IMG/VR virus record: IMGVR_UViG_3300048672_001051
Location: 62,001 to 126,000 of that record
Reading direction: 5' to 3' (one strand)
DNA: 64,000 nucleotides
A program made the position numbers and the translations under genes. Under the pieces are notes generated by a model. The model did not search any database, was not told where the DNA came from, and saw only the letters and a program-made list of their open reading frames with translations. Within the stretch, counting starts at the first letter, position 1. Every line of letters starts with the position of its first letter. Below, in pieces: positions 1 to 22,781 of the stretch.

Positions 1-1
1 A

Positions 2-787
2 TGGTTTTTTGATGCAGGCGTTAACTACGTAAAAATAGATAATATTTATTACGTAAAAGGATTTGAAGACAGTGTTTATAGTAAAACCCTAAAATCACAA
101 ATTGATCAGAAAAGAGTTATCAGTAGTTGCCAACCTAAAAGAGTAACATCTAAAGTAGTTGATGTTGACACTATAGACATAACTACCGCAGATTTATATG
201 GATTCTCTATAGTATCAGTCGAAGAGACACCTATACAGCAAAATTCAAATATAGTTATACCTCTAAAGGAAGAAATTCCTAAAGGTAAGTATTACATAGT
301 TCAGGGTACTACTAAAATAGAGTGTGACCTGAGACTCGGATATATAACTAGTGCTATAGCCGTACTATTTAAAGTATCTGATAATAAAAAAGTTTGGCTA
401 GAAGACAGCTTAAGTAATGTAGTAAAAGTTTTGACACCAGATGAATTCGGTTTTGTTAGCCTTTTAACTGAAGATATGTTTGTATTAAGTTACGATGTAG
501 ATAAGTACTGGCCAGCGCTAGAGCAAACTAAACCTTACACCCTGTTAGATAGTAATTTAAAAACTAACTCACAAAATAAAGTTTTGCAATATAAAGTAAT
601 TAAAACTTCCATATACAATGAAAAACATATTAGCAACTTAAATAAAAATTATTTAAGTATTAAATATTTAAAAAATTGGAAAGAAACTTTTAAAGTTGTT
701 GATGAAACCCTACCTGTAGGTATTAAACAATTTAAATTAAAAGATTGTGGAGTAATAAAAGGAAGTTTGGAGATAATAAATGATTGA
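2..787 (+). CDS. hypothetical protein, probably virion-associated (5' truncated by the window)
   Basis: Frame 2 is open from the window start (WFFDAGVNYVKID...) through the listed 431..787 ORF, so the real CDS is longer than the track shows. No recognisable motif. Confidence 0.6.
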   Translation, partial: WFFDAGVNYVKIDNIYYVKGFEDSVYSKTLKSQIDQKRVISSCQPKRVTSKVVDVDTIDITTADLYGFSIVSVEETPIQQNSNIVIPLKEEIPKGKYYIVQGTTKIECDLRLGYITSAIAVLFKVSDNKKVWLEDSLSNVVKVLTPDEFGFVSLLTEDMFVLSYDVDKYWPALEQTKPYTLLDSNLKTNSQNKVLQYKVIKTSIYNEKHISNLNKNYLSIKYLKNWKETFKVVDETLPVGIKQFKLKDCGVIKGSLEIIND

Positions 788-17422: not shown

Positions 17423-18517
17423 TTAAAACGAGAAGTCTTCGTCATCATCTAAATCGTTAATTAAAGTTAAATTAACATAGTTAGTGATGTCTTGCTCTTG
17501 AGGGGAGCTTTGTGTTTTATTTATATCTAGCCAATTTTTAATAAAATTAAATGGCAACTTAGGTTCAGGAATACCTTGAACCAATCCAAAAGTCTTTTTA
17601 ACTTTATGTGAACAATAGACCACCCAAGCATTATTTAGTTCTTCGTTTACACCAACAAGTTGGCGACCTTCTGAAAATAGATAAGCGTTAAAGTCTAGCT
17701 CTGTTTGTTCACAGGCCGCTATAAGACTTTGGACTGTAGCTTTATGTTCTAGTAAAAATTGCTTTCCACGAGGAGTCTGCAATTCAATTCTAAAAAACTC
17801 TGCAAATAGTGTTGCATGGAATTGAGATTCGTCAAAAGCAATTTTTTGAACTAGTTGAGCTACAGGTATAAACCAATCGTTTTCTGCTAACGCAAATGTT
17901 GCAGAGAATGAAGCCATAAACTGGACTTGCTCTAGCAAATAAAAAGCAGTGCAAGCTAACATAATACGATTATAAAGAACTTGATCATTTTGAATAATGT
18001 CAAGCCCGTATTGATGTCCAGCTATTCTCAAATCTTCAAGATGTTCTAAAACAACATCAAGACGTTTTGTAATATGCTTATTCTGTTGAATCATTTCAAA
18101 GATTTCATTAGCGTTAGGCAAGCAAAGCCTTACAATTTCAGAATAAGTGGCAGCGTGTGTATTTTCCATTTCACCATTTCTATACAAAGCTCGCCAAAGT
18201 TCTGTATTAGTAATAAATGGGGCTAGCAAAGGTACGATGGTGCGAGAAGCTACAGTGTCACCAGACCATTGATAGGTTAAGTTAATCCAAAGTAGTTCTT
18301 TAATTGCAGTAGGAGCTATTGATAGCTGTTGAGGCACACTTGCTAAATCAACCTCATTCTCAGACCAATCTGCTGCTTTTTGTCCTTTAAAAATTTTAAA
18401 AAGTGAATCGTGTTTTTTATTAACAGTATCGAATAGCCCAGGGTATTGCCCTAATATTAAACTATTTTCACCAGTCTTCCACTCGGTGTTTTCGATGTTA
18501 AATATTTTTACACTCAT
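17423..18517 (-). CDS. nrdB: class Ia ribonucleotide reductase beta subunit
   Basis: WSENEV, ENTHAATYS, EQVQFMASF, DESQFH ferritin-like diiron motifs; acidic C-terminal tail. Confidence 0.92.
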   Translation of the reverse strand: MSVKIFNIENTEWKTGENSLILGQYPGLFDTVNKKHDSLFKIFKGQKAADWSENEVDLASVPQQLSIAPTAIKELLWINLTYQWSGDTVASRTIVPLLAPFITNTELWRALYRNGEMENTHAATYSEIVRLCLPNANEIFEMIQQNKHITKRLDVVLEHLEDLRIAGHQYGLDIIQNDQVLYNRIMLACTAFYLLEQVQFMASFSATFALAENDWFIPVAQLVQKIAFDESQFHATLFAEFFRIELQTPRGKQFLLEHKATVQSLIAACEQTELDFNAYLFSEGRQLVGVNEELNNAWVVYCSHKVKKTFGLVQGIPEPKLPFNFIKNWLDINKTQSSPQEQDITNYVNLTLINDLDDDEDFSF

Positions 18518-18532
18518 ATTTATACCAAAAGA

Positions 18533-18555
18533 TGTGAGCTTTTAAAAAGCTCACA
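18533..18555 (-). terminator. hairpin/terminator between nrdA and nrdB
   Basis: TGTGAGCTTTT/AAAAGCTCACA inverted repeat followed by TCTTTT on the minus strand. Confidence 0.6.
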
Positions 18556-18566
18556 GATCATTTATT

Positions 18567-19517
18567 TTAGAGTGCGCAAGCGCCGCTCTCACAGCCTGAA
18601 GCTGTTTTGTCAGAATCTTCTGCGGAGTCAGTATCTTCTTCAGCATCAGTATCCATTACTGTATAGTAACTAGTTTTCAAACCCATCTTAAAAAAATAAG
18701 CAAGTTCTGCTATAGACTCTCTTAAAGATCTAGTTTTTTTATCACCACGCATATCATAATAAGTATCTGCACTGATAGCTTGACCACAAAATTTTTGAAC
18801 GATTGCATAACAATCAATCATATCATAATAAGGAATATCATATCCAAATTCATAATAACTTTGTAAACGTTCGTACTCAGGTGCAATAAAAATATTCGTA
18901 TAACTGTTATCTGTTTTTACTAAAGTTGGTCTACGTATTGGGTAAAGACCGTTTGTACTATTAGTAGCCTTACTAGAAGCTTCACATGGCATGAAAGCCT
19001 CAAGAACACTAAAAGCAATACCACCTTGTGCAATTATGCCGGCACGTAAAGTTTCCCAATCATATCGTAATTCAAAATTAGCAATTCCATCAACATTTTT
19101 ATTATAAGTGTCAATAGGTAGCCAACCCTGAGGATACTTAGTCTTATGAATCCAGGGAGCATTGCCGTATTTTATTGCAATATCTAAAGCAGCTTTATGT
19201 AGAAAGTAACTATGTCTTTCAGCAATAAAGTGTAAAAATACTTTACCTTCTTTAGAAGTATAATATTTTTTATTACGAGCCATGCAATAAGCAAGATTAG
19301 TAACACCAATCCCTACAGACATTCTATTTTTAGTAGTATAACCTACACGCGGTAAAGTATATTCTGTACCTAAGATGACTGCTCGAGCAGTCATCAACAT
19401 TGTATAACATTTTTTGTAATACTCTTCGTCTGTATAATCTTTGTGTAGATTAATAGCGCCAATATTACAAATAGCAATTTCATTTTTAAATGATTTTGAA
19501 ATAATTTTCTTAGACAA
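18567..19517 (-). CDS. nrdA: ribonucleotide reductase alpha subunit, C-terminal part
   Basis: EIAICNIG, GIGVTNL, AFMPCEASS, LKTSYY, C-terminal CESGAC; TTG start with GGTGA 5 nt upstream. Confidence 0.88.
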   Translation of the reverse strand: MSKKIISKSFKNEIAICNIGAINLHKDYTDEEYYKKCYTMLMTARAVILGTEYTLPRVGYTTKNRMSVGIGVTNLAYCMARNKKYYTSKEGKVFLHFIAERHSYFLHKAALDIAIKYGNAPWIHKTKYPQGWLPIDTYNKNVDGIANFELRYDWETLRAGIIAQGGIAFSVLEAFMPCEASSKATNSTNGLYPIRRPTLVKTDNSYTNIFIAPEYERLQSYYEFGYDIPYYDMIDCYAIVQKFCGQAISADTYYDMRGDKKTRSLRESIAELAYFFKMGLKTSYYTVMDTDAEEDTDSAEDSDKTASGCESGACAL

Positions 19518-20997
19518 TTATGTCACCAACTTTAACATTTTCTACATTAATTTGTTCACCATTAACTTTTAAAATCTCTGAAGCATGTAATAGTTCTGAA
19601 CTACCATCATCATAAATAATTTCATAGTAATCAGCTTCATGAGTTTTAAATAAATCTTTGACGTGAAGCAAAGCTCCAGTAACTAGTGTTATCTCAACAC
19701 AAAGATTAGACATTTTAATAGGCTCAAGAAATGGAGTATGATGATTAACTTCATAACTATTAAACTTATACAGACGACCACTTTCAAAAGGTTCTTTAGC
19801 AATCAAAGCTGCAAGATTAACTGCTTTAATTAAAGTTTTAGGTACATCTGGATTATTTAAATATTTAAAATAAAGTTCTTTAAAACCTTCATAATCATCA
19901 GAATCAAATTTAGCATAAAGATCTGGTGCATGATAAAGACTAATAAGCATCCAAGGAGTTTTTGTATTTATAGCTTCAATTAAAAAAGGATGTAATTTAA
20001 TATTATAATCAATACCAGGAACTCTTCGAGATTCAATTGATTTTGGATTTCGAAGTTTGATAATAATTTCAATTTCAGGATCTAAACTAGATACATAAGT
20101 TGTTGCAGCACCACCCCGGCTATTTTGTTTATTAGCACCAACTAAAGATTGAAGAACTCTGAAATAAGGTAATTTGCCTTGATGTTCAATTGTACCTTTT
20201 TTAATTGGATCCATTAAGCTACGAACACCATAAAGTGAGCCTATTCCAGCGCCTGCAACAGTCATTGTAGAGACTGCATAAGACTTAGCATCAATAGAGT
20301 CAATAGCATCTTCACATTCAATTAAACAGCAACTAGCTCCAGTTTTATTTACAGTTCCAAGATAGACCATATTAGGTGAAGGTAAGTTAACATCATGACT
20401 AGAATAGTCTTCATAGTAAGAAATAATATCATTTAAAAAAGACTGATGATCATACGCCGACAATGTTGTTGAATTAGTGTAAGCTACATAAATTGCAACA
20501 CGCATGTAAGTAAATTGAGGAGTTTCGTATAACTTACTAGTAGCTACATCTTTAATAATATATTTATCTACAAGTTGTTTTAATACTGTATAAGTATAAG
20601 TATAATCTAACTGATGATTGATTTTAGATTCAATAAAGTCTAGATCACTATCAGACAAATTAAAATCTCGGTAAAACCCAAGATCAATCATTCTGTAATA
20701 CTGATCTTTAAAAGTAGCTACAATGTTATCTGGAAAAACATTCTTAATAATTATTGGAAGATATAACCTACCTGCTGCTTTAAGTGATTTATCAGTTTCG
20801 TATTCTAAGCAAGTTTTAATTAAAGCTTCTTGTAGTTGTACAGTAGTACATTTATCATATATTTTTTTAACAGCACGGAGTGATATATCACTCCAAATTG
20901 TATCGTTCTGATACGCGAATTCCATCCACTTATTTAATTTTAATGGATCAAACTCTTGCAGCGAGCCATCTCGCTTTACAATATGGTTTATTGTCAA
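19510..20997 (-). CDS. nrdA: ribonucleotide reductase alpha subunit, N-terminal part
   Basis: ATP cone VKRDG, ETPQF, PSP, ASCCL, SRGGA and the catalytic SNLCVE; stops after a Hint-like tail. Confidence 0.9.
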   Translation of the reverse strand: MTINHIVKRDGSLQEFDPLKLNKWMEFAYQNDTIWSDISLRAVKKIYDKCTTVQLQEALIKTCLEYETDKSLKAAGRLYLPIIIKNVFPDNIVATFKDQYYRMIDLGFYRDFNLSDSDLDFIESKINHQLDYTYTYTVLKQLVDKYIIKDVATSKLYETPQFTYMRVAIYVAYTNSTTLSAYDHQSFLNDIISYYEDYSSHDVNLPSPNMVYLGTVNKTGASCCLIECEDAIDSIDAKSYAVSTMTVAGAGIGSLYGVRSLMDPIKKGTIEHQGKLPYFRVLQSLVGANKQNSRGGAATTYVSSLDPEIEIIIKLRNPKSIESRRVPGIDYNIKLHPFLIEAINTKTPWMLISLYHAPDLYAKFDSDDYEGFKELYFKYLNNPDVPKTLIKAVNLAALIAKEPFESGRLYKFNSYEVNHHTPFLEPIKMSNLCVEITLVTGALLHVKDLFKTHEADYYEIIYDDGSSELLHASEILKVNGEQINVENVKVGDIIV

Positions 20998-21040: not shown

Positions 21041-22234
21041 CTAAACAGTTGGTACGAAAATATTATTAACGACTTCACCTTCGCGAAGTGCTATACCAAC
21101 AGGGAATAGTGGTACAGAGTATAACGATAAAGCCTGGTAATCAACTGTTAAGTATGCTACACCTTCTAATGCTTCTTTATTATTAAAATAAGTTTCTACA
21201 TTATACTCTTTAGTTCCTTTAACACTACCAACATCAAAATATCTGTGAGGACTTTCTGGATCAACATTATGATTAACACAAATAATTTGAACTTTAGTTG
21301 GATCATTGGCTGCCAAATAAATTTTATGTATTAAAAATTCATCCGAAAGCATAATTTTGTATTTAAGTAGCCCGTTACTTCGTTGGCCTTGCATGTACGG
21401 TACAGTGTCATCTCTTAACATTACACCTTCATAACCAGCAGTCACATATGCTTCAAATTTTGAACGTACTTCAGTCATATTTAAAACTTTAGTTGTTTCA
21501 ACTAATTTAACTGATAAGCAATTCATCGCAGAAGCTATAGCTGAGTATCTTGTTATAAAAGCATCACTTGAAAACTTATCATATAGATGGTATTGAAGTT
21601 GAGTTATATCGTAGTTTCCGACTACAACATCTTCATCGTCTGAGTTAACTAAACTTGCAATTATTTCAAAAGGAACTGTTTGAGTGAATAACTCACCGTC
21701 AACTATATCCCCAATTGTAAGCATACTTAGTAAGTCTTTTGTAATATGTTTAAAGTTTTTAAACAATTTACCACTTCTACTTAAGTATTTAATAGTGGTC
21801 TCATCAACTTTAAAAGCTAAACATCTTATACCATTTAACTTTGGTTGCAGATAAACATTTTTTATAAATATCTCATCAGGTCCATGCAGTAAATGTTTTT
21901 TCTTACTATATTGATGTGCGAGTTGTGGCAAAATTGAATTGTTAGCGTTCAATTCTGTTTCACTTTTAAAATAGCCAGATTTTAATTGAGCATCATAGAG
22001 TTGCTCTAATTTAAGTTTAGCTTGTTCGGTAATAGTTGTTTCGTTTGCCTTACCTATATTTTTACCCACAGTAACGTATATATCTTTTACTTGCTGCTTT
22101 CCATCAGCATAGCCCCACTCTTTAGTAATTTTTATACCTAGAGCGGGCACTACTGCGTAATCTGTGTACGCTTTCCACACCTTAAGTTTGCCAGAAGAGG
22201 CGGACCCATAAAGTAGTGTATTATTTAAATTCAT
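21041..22234 (-). CDS. lig: ATP-dependent DNA ligase
   Basis: QPKLNGIRC (motif I), DGEL, EGVMLR, LLKYK; N-terminal GKNIGKANET domain. Confidence 0.9.
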   Translation of the reverse strand: MNLNNTLLYGSASSGKLKVWKAYTDYAVVPALGIKITKEWGYADGKQQVKDIYVTVGKNIGKANETTITEQAKLKLEQLYDAQLKSGYFKSETELNANNSILPQLAHQYSKKKHLLHGPDEIFIKNVYLQPKLNGIRCLAFKVDETTIKYLSRSGKLFKNFKHITKDLLSMLTIGDIVDGELFTQTVPFEIIASLVNSDDEDVVVGNYDITQLQYHLYDKFSSDAFITRYSAIASAMNCLSVKLVETTKVLNMTEVRSKFEAYVTAGYEGVMLRDDTVPYMQGQRSNGLLKYKIMLSDEFLIHKIYLAANDPTKVQIICVNHNVDPESPHRYFDVGSVKGTKEYNVETYFNNKEALEGVAYLTVDYQALSLYSVPLFPVGIALREGEVVNNIFVPTV

Positions 22235-22316: not shown

Positions 22317-22781
22317 CTAGTTGTTATCAGCAGCTAATCTTCTATTTTTATGCCATAATTTTTGAGCTTTATTATAAGCTTTTTTTGCTGGGTTAATGTA
22401 ATCCAATCCCGTATACTCGGTAGGTGGATAATTGACAGACTCAACATAATTTTTAAAAATATCGGCATTTTTAAAAGATTTATTATAAGGCACTTCAACT
22501 ACTTTAACTCCTTTGCTATGGAGATACTGTAATTTTTTCAAGTCCAAATCAACAGCTTTATACCACTGGTCTGCATTTTTATAAAAATACCCAATAGGTT
22601 TATAATGCTGTTCGCCGTGAACTTCAATACATATTGCAAGCATTGGTATGAAAATATCCATACGTTGATTTATCTCGTGAATAGGATATTCATGTACAAC
22701 TTCATATTCTGGATATGCCTCACAGCATAAATTATATATTAACCTTTGTTGTGCCGACGCACGATCATCTAATTTAGCCAT
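22317..22781 (-). CDS. Vsr/DUF559-like endonuclease
   Basis: RMDIFIPMLAICIEVHGEQHY motif. Confidence 0.7.
   Translation of the reverse strand: MAKLDDRASAQQRLIYNLCCEAYPEYEVVHEYPIHEINQRMDIFIPMLAICIEVHGEQHYKPIGYFYKNADQWYKAVDLDLKKLQYLHSKGVKVVEVPYNKSFKNADIFKNYVESVNYPPTEYTGLDYINPAKKAYNKAQKLWHKNRRLAADNN

What the first reader, a model, noticed from the sequence alone, without database searches (positions are those of the whole stretch)
18567..20997. nrdA split between its catalytic cysteines, with a Hint-like remnant at the break
The N part ends SNLCVE...YYEIIYDDGSSELLHASEILKVNGEQINVENVKVGDIIV*, which resembles Hint block B and the L..GD.I strand. The C part starts in the +1 frame (TTG, with GGTGA upstream) as SKKIISKSFKN-EIAICN, resembling the start of a C-intein. 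There is no Cys1 or terminal HN, so splicing is unlikely. The ORFs overlap by 8 nt with no intervening element. Established precedent: Aeromonas phage Aeh1 NrdA works as two polypeptides. Inference: a decayed split intein acts as an association module. A +1 frameshift or a single-base sequencing error are alternatives.
Basis: partly seen in the sequence, partly recalled or inferred. Interest (0 to 1): 0.65.

Follow-up and report, generated by a model that had tools for sequence, protein, structure and literature searches.

The report
Split phage nrdA joined by dead intein remnant
This jumbo phage encodes its ribonucleotide reductase large subunit as two overlapping genes cut inside a non-splicing intein-like (Hint) remnant, so it appears to be a natural case of a dead split intein kept as a clasp that holds the two halves of an essential enzyme together.

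Summary
nrdA lies on the minus strand as two ORFs, 19510-20997 (495 aa) and 18567-19517 (316 aa). They overlap by 8 nt, and the break falls between the Cys439- and Cys462-equivalents.

The break is not a sequencing error.
- Two other assemblies, one about 90% nucleotide-identical and one about 75% amino-acid-identical, carry the same 8-nt overlap.
- Both halves are under strong purifying selection (dN/dS 0.035 and 0.051).

The two tails are the halves of a roughly 55-aa loop insert.
- The insert is continuous in the NrdA of other jumbo phages (ME3, PhiXhv-16, FLC4-11C and about 45 metagenomic clusters).
- Two AlphaFold models of continuous versions match almost only inteins and Hint domains in Foldseek and VIA-align.
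- The insert profile reaches a bona fide multi-Hint protein at E 4e-4.
- It lacks block A, TxxH, blocks F/G and a +1 nucleophile, so splicing is not expected.

The cut sits in the hairpin where natural split inteins are cut. In three other lineages a homing endonuclease gene sits at exactly that point.

The tails carry opposite charge. A two-chain model scores 0.92 against 0.01 for the best control, and the tails touch in it.

Best reading: two coupled translation products reassemble without a covalent bond. Reads could not be checked.

The parts
19510..20997 (-). nrdA-a: N-terminal gene (495 aa, TTG start). Contains the ATP-cone, the all-alpha domain, the first half of the barrel and the N-half of the Hint remnant.
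   Evidence: ORF and translation. Pfam PF03477, PF00317 and PF02867 positions 1-219. 97% aa identity to the 495-aa orthologue in L006. dN/dS 0.035.
18567..19517 (-). nrdA-b: C-terminal gene (316 aa, TTG start). Contains the last strand of the Hint remnant and the second half of the barrel, with the Cys462, Tyr-Tyr and C-terminal Cys-pair equivalents.
   Evidence: ORF and translation. Pfam PF02867 positions 217-523. Orthologue P0007 in L006. dN/dS 0.051. Residue positions.
19510..19517 (-). 8-nt stop/start overlap TTGTCTAA (TTG start of nrdA-b, TAA stop of nrdA-a). Proposed site of translational coupling.
   Evidence: Sequence. Identical in L006. Same architecture, TTGAGTAA, in L020, where Ser2 of nrdA-b is kept by a different codon family.
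19523..19527 (-). Shine-Dalgarno-like GGTGA, formed by the Gly-Asp codons of the conserved GD motif, 5 nt upstream of the TTG.
   Evidence: Sequence. Its function is inferred.
19513..19656 (-). N-half of the loop insert / Hint remnant (nrdA-a aa 448-495). About five strands, net charge -8.
   Evidence: Alignments A2, A5 and A6. AF2 models of continuous homologues and their fold searches. Charge. Interface residues 448-469 and 488-495 in the two-chain model.
19482..19517 (-). C-half of the Hint remnant (nrdA-b aa 1-12, MSKKIISKSFKN). The last long strand, net charge +4.
   Evidence: Aligns with the last strand of continuous inserts. That strand is confidently modelled. nrdA-b residues 1-23 are in the predicted interface. 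Charge.
19699..19701 (-). Codon of the thiyl-radical cysteine (E. coli Cys439 equivalent, nrdA-a Cys433).
   Evidence: SNLCVE motif. Profile flanks align to E. coli NrdA 439-454.
19467..19469 (-). Codon of the Cys462 equivalent (nrdA-b Cys17).
   Evidence: EIAIC motif. Profile flank aligns to E. coli NrdA 456-472.
20329..20331 (-). Codon of the Cys225 equivalent (nrdA-a Cys223), the disulfide partner of the cysteine carried by the other polypeptide.
   Evidence: ASCCLIE motif compared with E. coli SSCVLIE.
17423..18517 (-). nrdB (364 aa), the small subunit, immediately downstream.
   Evidence: ORF. The orthologue in L006 carries PF00268. 94% aa identity, dN/dS 0.036.

Best explanation

The cut lies inside a roughly 55-60-aa insert in the surface loop that corresponds to E. 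coli NrdA 454-456. That insert is a truncated, catalytically dead Hint (intein) domain. It keeps the central strands of the fold, including the 'dG..l....nG......vKvGD.i' pattern. It lacks block A, TxxH, blocks F/G and a +1 nucleophile.

The gene is cut in the hairpin between the GD strand and the last strand. This is the position where natural split inteins are split and where homing endonucleases sit.

Proposed mechanism (inferred):
- nrdA-b is translated from its own TTG, coupled to termination of nrdA-a at the 8-nt overlap.
- The acidic N-half of the remnant (net -8) and the basic last strand on nrdA-b (net +4) zip together by strand complementation, as split-intein halves do, but without splicing.
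- This helps the two barrel halves rebuild one active site, (alpha-a/alpha-b)2 with NrdB2, as shown biochemically for phage Aeh1.

Origin (inferred): a Hint remnant that travelled with, or attracted, a free-standing homing endonuclease. In this lineage either the endonuclease was lost, or a 1-2-nt frameshift split a continuous insert.
For: Shown by the tool results:
- Anatomy and residue partition.
- The same break in L006 (junction identical over 144 nt, locus about 90% identical) and in L020 (about 75% aa identity, TTGAGTAA).
- dN/dS 0.035 and 0.051 at dS 0.37-0.46.
- No other PF02867 or NrdD gene in the 98%-complete genome.
- The insert is continuous in ME3, PhiXhv-16 and FLC4-11C and in about 45 of 67 representative clusters.
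- About 14 of those 67 clusters are N-fragments that end right after the GD motif.
- Hint likeness, first model: Foldseek's first 31 listed hits are all inteins, best 6bs8 at E 2.4e-3, rmsd 1.3 A over 52 columns, 27% identity. VIA-align's top 27 hits are all Hint-family, Z up to 7.0.
- Hint likeness, second model from the window's sister clade: the same pattern, Z 8.3, with 5bkh at rmsd 1.7 A over 57 residues.
- Profile hit to the tandem-Hint protein P0192 at E 4.3e-4. hhalign 65% probability, E 6e-5.
- Homing endonuclease genes at exactly this point in L012, L013 and L021.
- An endonuclease-less split with a TAATG overlap in L022.
- Charge complementarity in all seven split lineages.
- Two-chain model: ipSAE 0.92 against a best control of 0.01. 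That mark was reached by 51 of 78 solved complexes and 2 of 108 mismatched pairs. The runs agree in at least 93% of contacts, and the partner's pLDDT is at least 87. The interface includes nrdA-a 448-469 and 488-495 and nrdA-b 1-23.

Precedent: Aeh1 NrdA-a/NrdA-b is fully active, and its tails are essential (PMC3045599).
Against: - There are no protein, RNA or read data for this phage.
- Pfam HMMs and a PDB sequence-profile search find no Hint signal. Hint likeness therefore rests on predicted structures of homologues (pLDDT about 90 in the core, MSAs of 11-15 rows), one profile hit and a moderate hhalign score.
- VIA-align Z values of 7-8 are within the range common for small beta domains.
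- The complex score may reflect the model's memory of single-chain NrdA structures.
- In Aeh1 the tails were not needed for alpha-a/alpha-b pairing, only for dimerisation and activity. The remnant here may likewise not be the main glue.
- The SD-like motif is weak in L020.
Confidence: 0.72

Rival explanations
1. Programmed +1 ribosomal frameshifting at the overlap yields a single full-length NrdA, and the two ORFs are not separate proteins.
For: - The C frame is +1 relative to the N frame.
- Skipping one base at GTC-T-AAG would give a product about the same length as the continuous ME3 loop.
- The longest identical nucleotide run between the window and L006 (144 nt) spans the junction.
- An SD-like GGTGA lies upstream, as in prfB.
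Against: - There is no slippery codon. GUC cannot re-pair on UCU.
- The shift window differs in L020 (TTT-GAG-TAA).
- No RNA structure at the junction (z = 0.54).
- The codon after the TTG stays Ser through TCT versus AGT, which suggests it is read in the C frame.
- Relatives function with an endonuclease gene between the same two halves, so two chains are viable.
- L022 uses a classic TAATG restart.
Confidence: 0.06
2. The split is real and the two chains assemble, but the Hint-like tails are passive passengers. The extensive barrel interface alone holds the halves together.
For: - In the model, most of the 390-odd confident contacts lie in the barrel and the N-domain, not the tails.
- Some sister-clade continuous inserts have lost the GD motif (P0160, P0194), so the insert is evolutionarily plastic.
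Against: - The cut falls in the same hairpin of the remnant in at least seven lineages, with conserved opposite charges on the two sides.
- The last strand is confidently paired in the models.
- Aeh1's tails, although different in sequence, were essential for activity (PMC3045599).
Confidence: 0.15
3. The tails are an atypical but active split intein that trans-splices the halves into one chain.
For: - The fold resembles inteins, including class 3 and split ones.
- The genomic layout in relatives (half | endonuclease | half) is that of fractured genes (PMC2677866).
Against: - There is no N-terminal Cys/Ser/Thr or block A. The insert starts about 45-70 residues into the Hint fold.
- There is no TxxH.
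- The C-half is only about 12 aa, has no block F/G, and ends KN followed by Glu, which is not a nucleophile.
- Continuous homologues keep the insert flanked by intact extein sequence.
- Genuine inteins coexist at the separate Cys439 site in FLC4-11C and L012.
Confidence: 0.03
4. Assembly or sequencing artefact, or a recently inactivated pseudogene.
For: The window comes from a metagenome-derived virus record, and reads could not be inspected.
Against: - Three independent assemblies of diverged phages share the break.
- dN/dS is 0.035 and 0.051 on the two sides.
- All catalytic residues are kept.
- This is the sole RNR catalytic gene in the genome.
Confidence: 0.02

Closest known systems
Aeromonas phage Aeh1 NrdA-a / MobE / NrdA-b 'genes in pieces' (Friedrich et al. 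2007; Crona et al. 2011, PMC3045599)
   Same: - Class Ia nrdA is split in the same loop, between the Cys439 and Cys462 equivalents.
- The two products are translated independently, and each carries an extra tail of opposite charge.
- The enzyme is active as (alpha-a/alpha-b)2 beta2, and the tails are essential.
- The authors speculated that the tails might be remnants of a degenerate intein.
   Different: - Aeh1 has an HNH endonuclease (mobE) between the halves. The window has nothing, only an 8-nt overlap.
- The Aeh1 tails show no recognisable similarity to this insert.
- The charge polarity is reversed: the NrdA-a tail is basic in Aeh1.
- Here the tails are halves of a domain that exists in continuous form in relatives and has a Hint-like fold.
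Fractured genes with split inteins and a free-standing homing endonuclease (Dassa et al. 2009, PMC2677866), including NrdA-1..7 and the endonuclease-less gp41-7 locus
   Same: - The gene is cut within a Hint domain at the endonuclease-insertion / split site.
- Relatives (L012, L013, L021) have N-half | endonuclease | C-half with overlapping reading frames.
- The N-half is acidic and the C-half basic, as reported for NrdA-2, NrdJ-1 and IMPDH-1.
- An endonuclease-less version is known (gp41-7).
   Different: - Those inteins are complete and predicted to trans-splice, and in NrdA they sit directly before Cys439.
- This remnant sits about 15 residues downstream and lacks block A, TxxH, blocks F/G and a +1 nucleophile.
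- It is therefore retained in the mature enzyme.
- True split inteins at Cys439 were also found here (P0012, P0021, P0046, P0058, P0098, P0101), and they are distinct from the remnant.
Continuous insert-bearing NrdA of jumbo phages (Acinetobacter phage ME3, Xanthomonas phage PhiXhv-16, Ralstonia/Burkholderia phages FLC4-11C/FLC8)
   Same: The same loop insert at the same position, with the same strand pattern. ME3 belongs to the sister group of the window's NrdA.
   Different: The frame is uninterrupted across the point where the window is cut. FLC4-11C additionally carries a complete mini-intein at Cys439. ME3's ATP-cone is split off by another endonuclease.
Other endonuclease-less split RNRs: Thermus phage phiYS40 nrdJ-a/nrdJ-b (12-nt spacer; cited in PMC3653736) and Pseudomonas aeruginosa NrdJa/NrdJb (from my own knowledge)
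   Same: An RNR catalytic subunit encoded by two adjacent ORFs without an intervening element.
   Different: These are class II enzymes with a different split position, and no Hint-like tails have been reported.
Hint superfamily domains (mini-inteins, bacterial intein-like / PT-HINT domains, e.g. P0192)
   Same: The central beta strands and the sequence pattern around block B and the KVGD strand.
   Different: Only about 55-60 of about 130 residues are present, and none of the catalytic motifs. Pfam models do not score it.

Membership tests
Class Ia ribonucleotide reductase large subunit (NrdA) | ATP-cone, all-alpha domain and 10-stranded alpha/beta barrel | tested here: met
   PF03477, PF00317 and PF02867 positions 1-219 are on nrdA-a. 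PF02867 positions 217-523 are on nrdA-b.
Class Ia ribonucleotide reductase large subunit (NrdA) | Catalytic and radical-transfer residues (Cys225, Asn437, Cys439, Glu441, Cys462, Tyr730-Tyr731, C-terminal Cys pair) | tested here: met
   All are present, but divided between the two ORFs.
Class Ia ribonucleotide reductase large subunit (NrdA) | One continuous polypeptide | tested here: not met
   Two ORFs in different frames with an 8-nt overlap, conserved in L006 and L020.
Class Ia ribonucleotide reductase large subunit (NrdA) | Adjacent nrdB partner | tested here: met
   ORF 17423-18517. The orthologue in L006 carries PF00268.
Intein (self-splicing protein element) | Hint fold | tested here: met
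   The match is partial. The central roughly 55-60 residues of two AF2 models of continuous homologues match inteins, hedgehog and BIL domains almost exclusively. The model was not made from the window's own fused sequence.
Intein (self-splicing protein element) | Block A with an N-terminal Cys/Ser/Thr (or the class 3 equivalents) | tested here: not met
   The insert begins right after extein-like ...LPT...DLF/Y. The first roughly 45-70 Hint residues are absent.
Intein (self-splicing protein element) | Block B TxxH | tested here: not met
   The window has HASE where P0192 has TPNH.
Intein (self-splicing protein element) | Blocks F/G with a terminal Asn/Gln followed by Cys/Ser/Thr | tested here: not met
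   The C-half is about 12 aa and ends KN followed by Glu-Ile-Ala.
Intein (self-splicing protein element) | Recognised by curated Hint/intein HMMs | tested here: not met
   No PF14890, PF01079, PF13403 or PF07591 hit, even at E 10. The PDB sequence profile finds only the NrdA flanks.
Split intein / fractured gene (Dassa 2009) | Host gene cut at the intein's endonuclease-insertion (natural split) site | tested here: met
   The break lies in the hairpin before the last long strand. By interpolation of the VIA alignment to gp41-1 (model 3..81 against 23..103), this is about residue 87, close to the known split after residue 88. The value is approximate.
Split intein / fractured gene (Dassa 2009) | Free-standing homing endonuclease gene between the halves | tested here: not met
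   The window has none, only the 8-nt overlap, and no copy of that endonuclease family is found in the genome. One is present in relatives L012, L013 and L021.
Split intein / fractured gene (Dassa 2009) | Protein trans-splicing | not testable with these tools
   Predicted absent, because the catalytic motifs are missing.
Aeh1-type genes-in-pieces NrdA | Split between the Cys439 and Cys462 equivalents, with extra tails on both products | tested here: met
   compared with PMC3045599.
Aeh1-type genes-in-pieces NrdA | mobE (HNH) endonuclease between the halves, and tails homologous to Aeh1's | tested here: not met
   There is no intervening gene. The tails are dissimilar by inspection.
Aeh1-type genes-in-pieces NrdA | Active (alpha-a/alpha-b)2 beta2 holoenzyme | not testable with these tools
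   Only a model is available: ipSAE 0.92 against a best control of 0.01.
Programmed +1 frameshift gene | Conserved slippery / hungry-codon site with a stimulator | tested here: not met
   No re-pairing is possible. The shift window is not conserved in L020, and no RNA structure is predicted.

The most novel reading that the evidence does not exclude
The Hint remnant and the GIY-YIG-like endonuclease together form a previously undescribed kind of mobile cassette, a non-splicing 'fractured-gene' element. It invades insert-less nrdA genes at the Cys439-Cys462 loop and brings its own protein-level antidote, in the form of complementary dead-intein halves that re-zip the enzyme. Loss of the endonuclease then leaves either a continuous insert (ME3, FLC, PhiXhv) or an endonuclease-less split gene (this phage, L020, L022). 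The Aeh1 tails would be a further-decayed example of the same principle.
Probability: 0.3. Interest if true: 0.8.

Novelty: new variant of a known kind. Interest (0 to 1): 0.66.

Why it matters
Split genes for essential enzymes are rare in phages, and how their products find each other is understood biochemically for only one case, Aeh1.

Here the clasp has a recognisable origin. It is the middle of a Hint domain stripped of all splicing chemistry, and it is cut where split inteins are cut. This gives a concrete and testable form to the Aeh1 authors' speculation that such tails descend from degenerate inteins.

The arrangement is not a single oddity. Of the 67 representative protein clusters that carry this insert, about 14 are N-fragments ending after the GD motif, and these occur both with and without an endonuclease gene.

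It also offers a natural, orthogonal, non-ligating protein-complementation pair of about 48 and 12 residues. Finally, it is a system for studying how homing endonucleases, inteins and their host genes reach a truce.

Tried and rejected
- **Near-DNA relatives.** Megablast of the locus against phages found nothing. The peptide-pattern scan of IMG/VR found nothing. A tblastn with the tail alone gave only chance hits.
- **Read support.** Independent assemblies were used instead.
- **No joined protein.** The two ORFs were always handled as separate references, and the only juxtaposition was a printed display with an 'x' at the break. The window's own remnant was therefore not folded as one chain.
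- **Pfam and PDB sequence profiles for Hint.** Negative. There were only weak Tudor-like noise hits.
- **RNA structure at the junction.** None.
- **My first working idea, 'an ordinary SH3/Tudor-like loop insert, not an intein'.** Abandoned after both fold searches returned inteins.
- **Endonuclease relic in the window or its genome.** None found.
- **A second RNR that could make nrdA dispensable.** None found.
- **Alignment A4.** It mis-aligned the window tail and was discarded.
- **The 116-120-aa ORF between the halves in L009.** It has no family assignment.
- **The tree.** It is FastTree only and is used as a guide, not as proof of the order of events.
Full report
**1. The observation**

The feature is on the minus strand. 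ORF 19510..20997 (495 aa, TTG start) carries the ATP-cone, the all-alpha domain and Pfam barrel positions 1-219. It then continues for about 55 unmatched residues and stops at TAA 19512-19510.

ORF 18567..19517 (316 aa) begins at a TTG that directly follows an in-frame TAA. It is in the +1 frame and carries barrel positions 217-523.

The ORFs overlap by 8 nt (TTGTCTAA). GGTGA, formed by the Gly-Asp codons of the tail, lies 5 nt upstream of the TTG.

The Cys225, Asn437, Cys439 and Glu441 equivalents are on the first product. The Cys462, Tyr-Tyr and C-terminal Cys-pair equivalents are on the second. nrdB follows immediately.

The window is part of a 229,656-bp virus record that is 98% complete. 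That record has no other PF02867 gene and no NrdD gene.

**2. The split is real**

No close DNA relative exists among deposited phages or in IMG/VR. The word-index protein search, however, found a 495-aa protein on a 78-kb Logan contig from SRR28032195.
- That locus (L006) is about 90% identical in DNA over nrdA-nrdB.
- It has the same 495-aa and 310-aa pair and an identical junction.
- Between the two phages, dN/dS is 0.035 for the N gene (dS 0.37), 0.051 for the C gene (dS 0.46) and 0.036 for nrdB.

A third, more distant relative is L020 from a JGI metagenome, whose C part is about 75% identical to the window's.
- It also has a TTG-started N gene of 490 aa and a TTG-started C gene.
- The two overlap by 8 nt (TTGAGTAA).
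- The residues on both sides of the junction differ from the window's, but Ser2 of the C product is kept through TCT versus AGT. This suggests that this codon is read in the C frame.

A sequencing error or a recent pseudogene is therefore excluded for practical purposes.

**3. What the tails are**

The best tblastn hit, Acinetobacter phage ME3 NrdA, aligns through the whole tail. In ME3 the same sequence pattern is continuous from the SNLC motif to the EIALC motif. PhiXhv-16 and FLC4-11C/FLC8 have longer continuous versions.

Profile flanks map the insert between E. coli NrdA residues 454 and 456. The two tails are thus the two parts of one loop insert (alignments A2, A5, A6).

FLC4-11C and the metagenomic locus L012 additionally have complete inteins at the classical site directly before Cys439. 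These inteins end in Gly-Gln. The loop insert is therefore a separate entity from the classical RNR intein.

**4. The insert is Hint-like**

I first expected an SH3/Tudor-like loop domain, because Pfam gives only weak Tudor noise and no Hint hit. The fold evidence pointed elsewhere.

First model: an AF2 model of a continuous, permitted homologue (P0028:1-92, MSA A3), with core pLDDT of about 90 and five to six strands.
- Foldseek against the PDB returned inteins as its first 31 listed hits. The best is the M. smegmatis class 3 DnaB intein, at E 2.4e-3, TM 0.51, rmsd 1.3 A over 52 columns and 27% identity.
- The Foldseek-independent VIA-align scan of 48,161 chains returned inteins, hedgehog and BIL domains as its top 27, with Z 7.0 down to 2.9.

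Second model: from the window's sister clade (P0142:369-462, MSA A6).
- The pattern was the same. Foldseek's first 32 listed hits and VIA-align's top 25 are all Hint-family.
- The best values are Z 8.3, and 5bkh at rmsd 1.7 A over 57 residues.

The Z values on their own are middling. What is informative is that the lists are almost exclusively Hint-family and that the result was replicated.

At the sequence level:
- An hmmsearch with the insert profile against 1.84 billion representatives found 67 proteins at E <= 1e-3. One of them is P0192, a protein of tandem PT-HINT/Hint/intein domains, at E 4.3e-4 over four stretches.
- hhalign of the profile against one of its Hint domains gives 65% probability and E 6e-5. 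The alignment runs from the strand before block B to the KVGD strand.

The matched part of real inteins runs from about residue 35-70 to about 105-140. The insert therefore lacks:
- the N-terminal third (block A and its nucleophile);
- TxxH, where the window has HASE;
- blocks F/G.

Its last residues (Lys-Asn) are followed by Glu. Splicing is not expected.

**5. Where the cut falls, and what sits there in relatives**

In the models the cut lies in the hairpin between the GD strand and the last long strand. By interpolation of the gp41-1 alignment, this is about residue 87, close to that intein's natural split point. This placement is approximate.

A search with the C part, which by length can only retrieve fragments, found many 290-360-aa NrdA C-fragments on long contigs. 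They fall into three groups:
- genuine C-inteins fused to Cys439;
- fragments that start at M-x-DLY;
- fragments that start, like the window's, with the basic last strand.

Their contexts are as follows.

| Locus | N part | Between the halves | C part |
|---|---|---|---|
| L012 | 551-aa piece; nrdA further cut upstream by an HNH endonuclease gene, with a LAGLIDADG intein at Cys439 | 306-aa ORF, homing-endonuclease PHROGs | 321 aa |
| L013 | 496 aa | 309-aa ORF, homing-endonuclease PHROGs | 309 aa |
| L021 | 503 aa | 289-aa ORF of the same kind (weak NUMOD3 hit only) | 308 aa |
| L009 | 494 aa | 116-120-aa unassigned ORF | 310 aa |
| L022 (phiKZ-like contig) | 500 aa | nothing; TAATG overlap | 258 aa (as called) |

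The three endonuclease ORFs in L012, L013 and L021 share an N-terminal GIY-YIG-like motif by eye, and L021 has the weak NUMOD3 hit.

Of the 67 profile hits, about 45 are full-length NrdAs with a continuous insert. About 14 are N-fragments that end just after the GD motif. One of these is a 97-aa mini-gene made of a C-intein plus the Cys439 loop and the N-half of the remnant.

The N-halves are acidic (net -5 to -12) and the C-halves basic (+2 to +5) in all seven split lineages. The same polarity was reported for several split inteins (PMC2677866).

**6. Evolutionary setting (suggestive only)**

I built a FastTree tree of the 300 residues after Cys462, with 75 rows.
- The window, L006 and L020 form a clade with 100% support.
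- That clade is sister (99%) to continuous-insert NrdAs, including ME3.
- The L022 split is independent.
- The four splits with an intervening ORF (three endonucleases plus L009's unassigned ORF) are scattered. L013 is sister to an insert-less NrdA (98%).

Presence of the insert is patchy. This fits a mobile or frequently lost element, but it does not settle the order of events.

For the window's clade there are two routes:
- loss of an endonuclease from an L012-like state;
- a 2-nt deletion or 1-nt insertion in an ME3-like continuous insert.

The combined tail length (16 residues from the GD motif to Lys-Asn, plus the initiator Met) equals ME3's. A small indel would create both the TAA and the TTG, and the GD codons already supply GGTGA. 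This makes the second route attractive. No copy of the endonuclease family is present in the genome.

**7. Mechanism**

Shown:
- two conserved, selected ORFs;
- a Hint-like remnant cut at the split-intein position;
- opposite charges on the two halves;
- viability of this cut in lineages where an endonuclease gene forces separate translation.

Modelled: the two chains dock with ipSAE 0.92 in all three runs, against a best control of 0.01.
- That mark was reached by 51 of 78 solved complexes and 2 of 108 mismatched pairs.
- The runs agree in at least 93% of contacts, and the partner's pLDDT is at least 87.
- The confident interface includes nrdA-a 448-469 and 488-495 and nrdA-b 1-23, which means the tails touch.
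- The pass may partly reflect the model's memory of single-chain NrdA structures.

Inferred:
- termination-reinitiation coupling at the overlap;
- non-covalent reassembly in which the remnant halves zip by strand complementation;
- an (alpha-a/alpha-b)2 beta2 holoenzyme, as in Aeh1, where the tails were essential for activity and dimerisation (PMC3045599).

A +1 frameshift is unlikely. There is no slippery site, the shift window is not conserved in L020, and no RNA structure is predicted (z = 0.54).

**8. Comparison with what is known, and novelty**

- Aeh1 shares the loop, the two-chain enzyme and charged tails. It differs in having mobE, unrelated tail sequences and reversed polarity.
- Fractured genes share the half | endonuclease | half layout and the split position within a Hint domain. 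They are splicing-competent and sit at Cys439.
- Endonuclease-less split RNRs are known for class II (phiYS40, cited in PMC3653736).

Full-text searches found no description of a non-splicing Hint remnant in the NrdA Cys439-Cys462 loop, or of its recurrent fission. I rate it a new variant of a known kind.

**9. Limits**

- No reads, RNA or protein data were available.
- The Hint assignment rests on predicted structures of homologues with shallow MSAs, plus modest profile statistics.

Noticed in passing
L007:1132-4209 (Ralstonia phage FLC4-11C nrdA); L012:1454-3109; P0133: Complete inteins sit directly before the thiyl-radical Cys439 of jumbo-phage NrdA. They end in ...TGQ, a C-terminal Gln rather than Asn. 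One (L012) carries a LAGLIDADG domain. They coexist with the separate loop remnant.
   Followed up: partly
L004 (Acinetobacter phage ME3, KU935715.1 76937-80139): ME3 nrdA is itself in pieces. A 112-aa ATP-cone fragment and the 687-aa main gene are separated by an annotated homing nuclease, while the loop insert stays continuous.
   Followed up: no
L020:2325-2769: In the window's 75%-identical relative, nrdB-proximal nrdA-b stops after ...AFMP, just before the conserved CE(A/S)SS motif. About 200 nt of spacer follow, and then an ORF with Cys/His-rich motifs and no Pfam hit. This is probably a second endonuclease or intron interruption that the window lacks.
   Followed up: partly
P0164 (97 aa), P0172, P0176, P0185 (53-67 aa): These are mini-genes that encode only a C-intein plus the Cys439 loop and the N-half of the remnant, or the loop and N-half alone. 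They imply that nrdA is encoded in three or more pieces in some uncultured phages.
   Followed up: no
P0144 residues 1344-1408 (2719-aa protein with a CHU_C/T9SS signal): The insert profile, without the NrdA flanks, hits a repeated module of a giant secreted bacterial protein at E 3e-11. I cannot tell whether this is true homology or compositional bias in a repeat.
   Followed up: partly
L022:5700-6020: The phiKZ-like relative's nrdA-b is broken again near its C-terminus, where overlapping ORFs carry the YY and CxxC parts. This is either a further split or an assembly frameshift.
   Followed up: no
window 18517-18566 (minus strand): Between nrdA-b and nrdB there is a GC-rich hairpin (about 18532-18556) followed by a T run. 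A TATAAATA motif, resembling a T4-type late promoter, abuts the nrdB ATG.
   Followed up: no
window 20995-20997 and L006/L020 equivalents: nrdA-a itself starts with TTG and has no obvious Shine-Dalgarno sequence. This holds in all three related phages.
   Followed up: partly
window 22317-22781 (minus strand): A 154-aa ORF upstream of the ATP-dependent DNA ligase gene (21041-22234, PF01068) has no Pfam family. It is conserved in position in L006.
   Followed up: partly
L009:3649-4011: The 116-120-aa ORF that occupies the endonuclease position between the nrdA halves in L009 matches no endonuclease family. It may be a decayed endonuclease or something else.
   Followed up: partly
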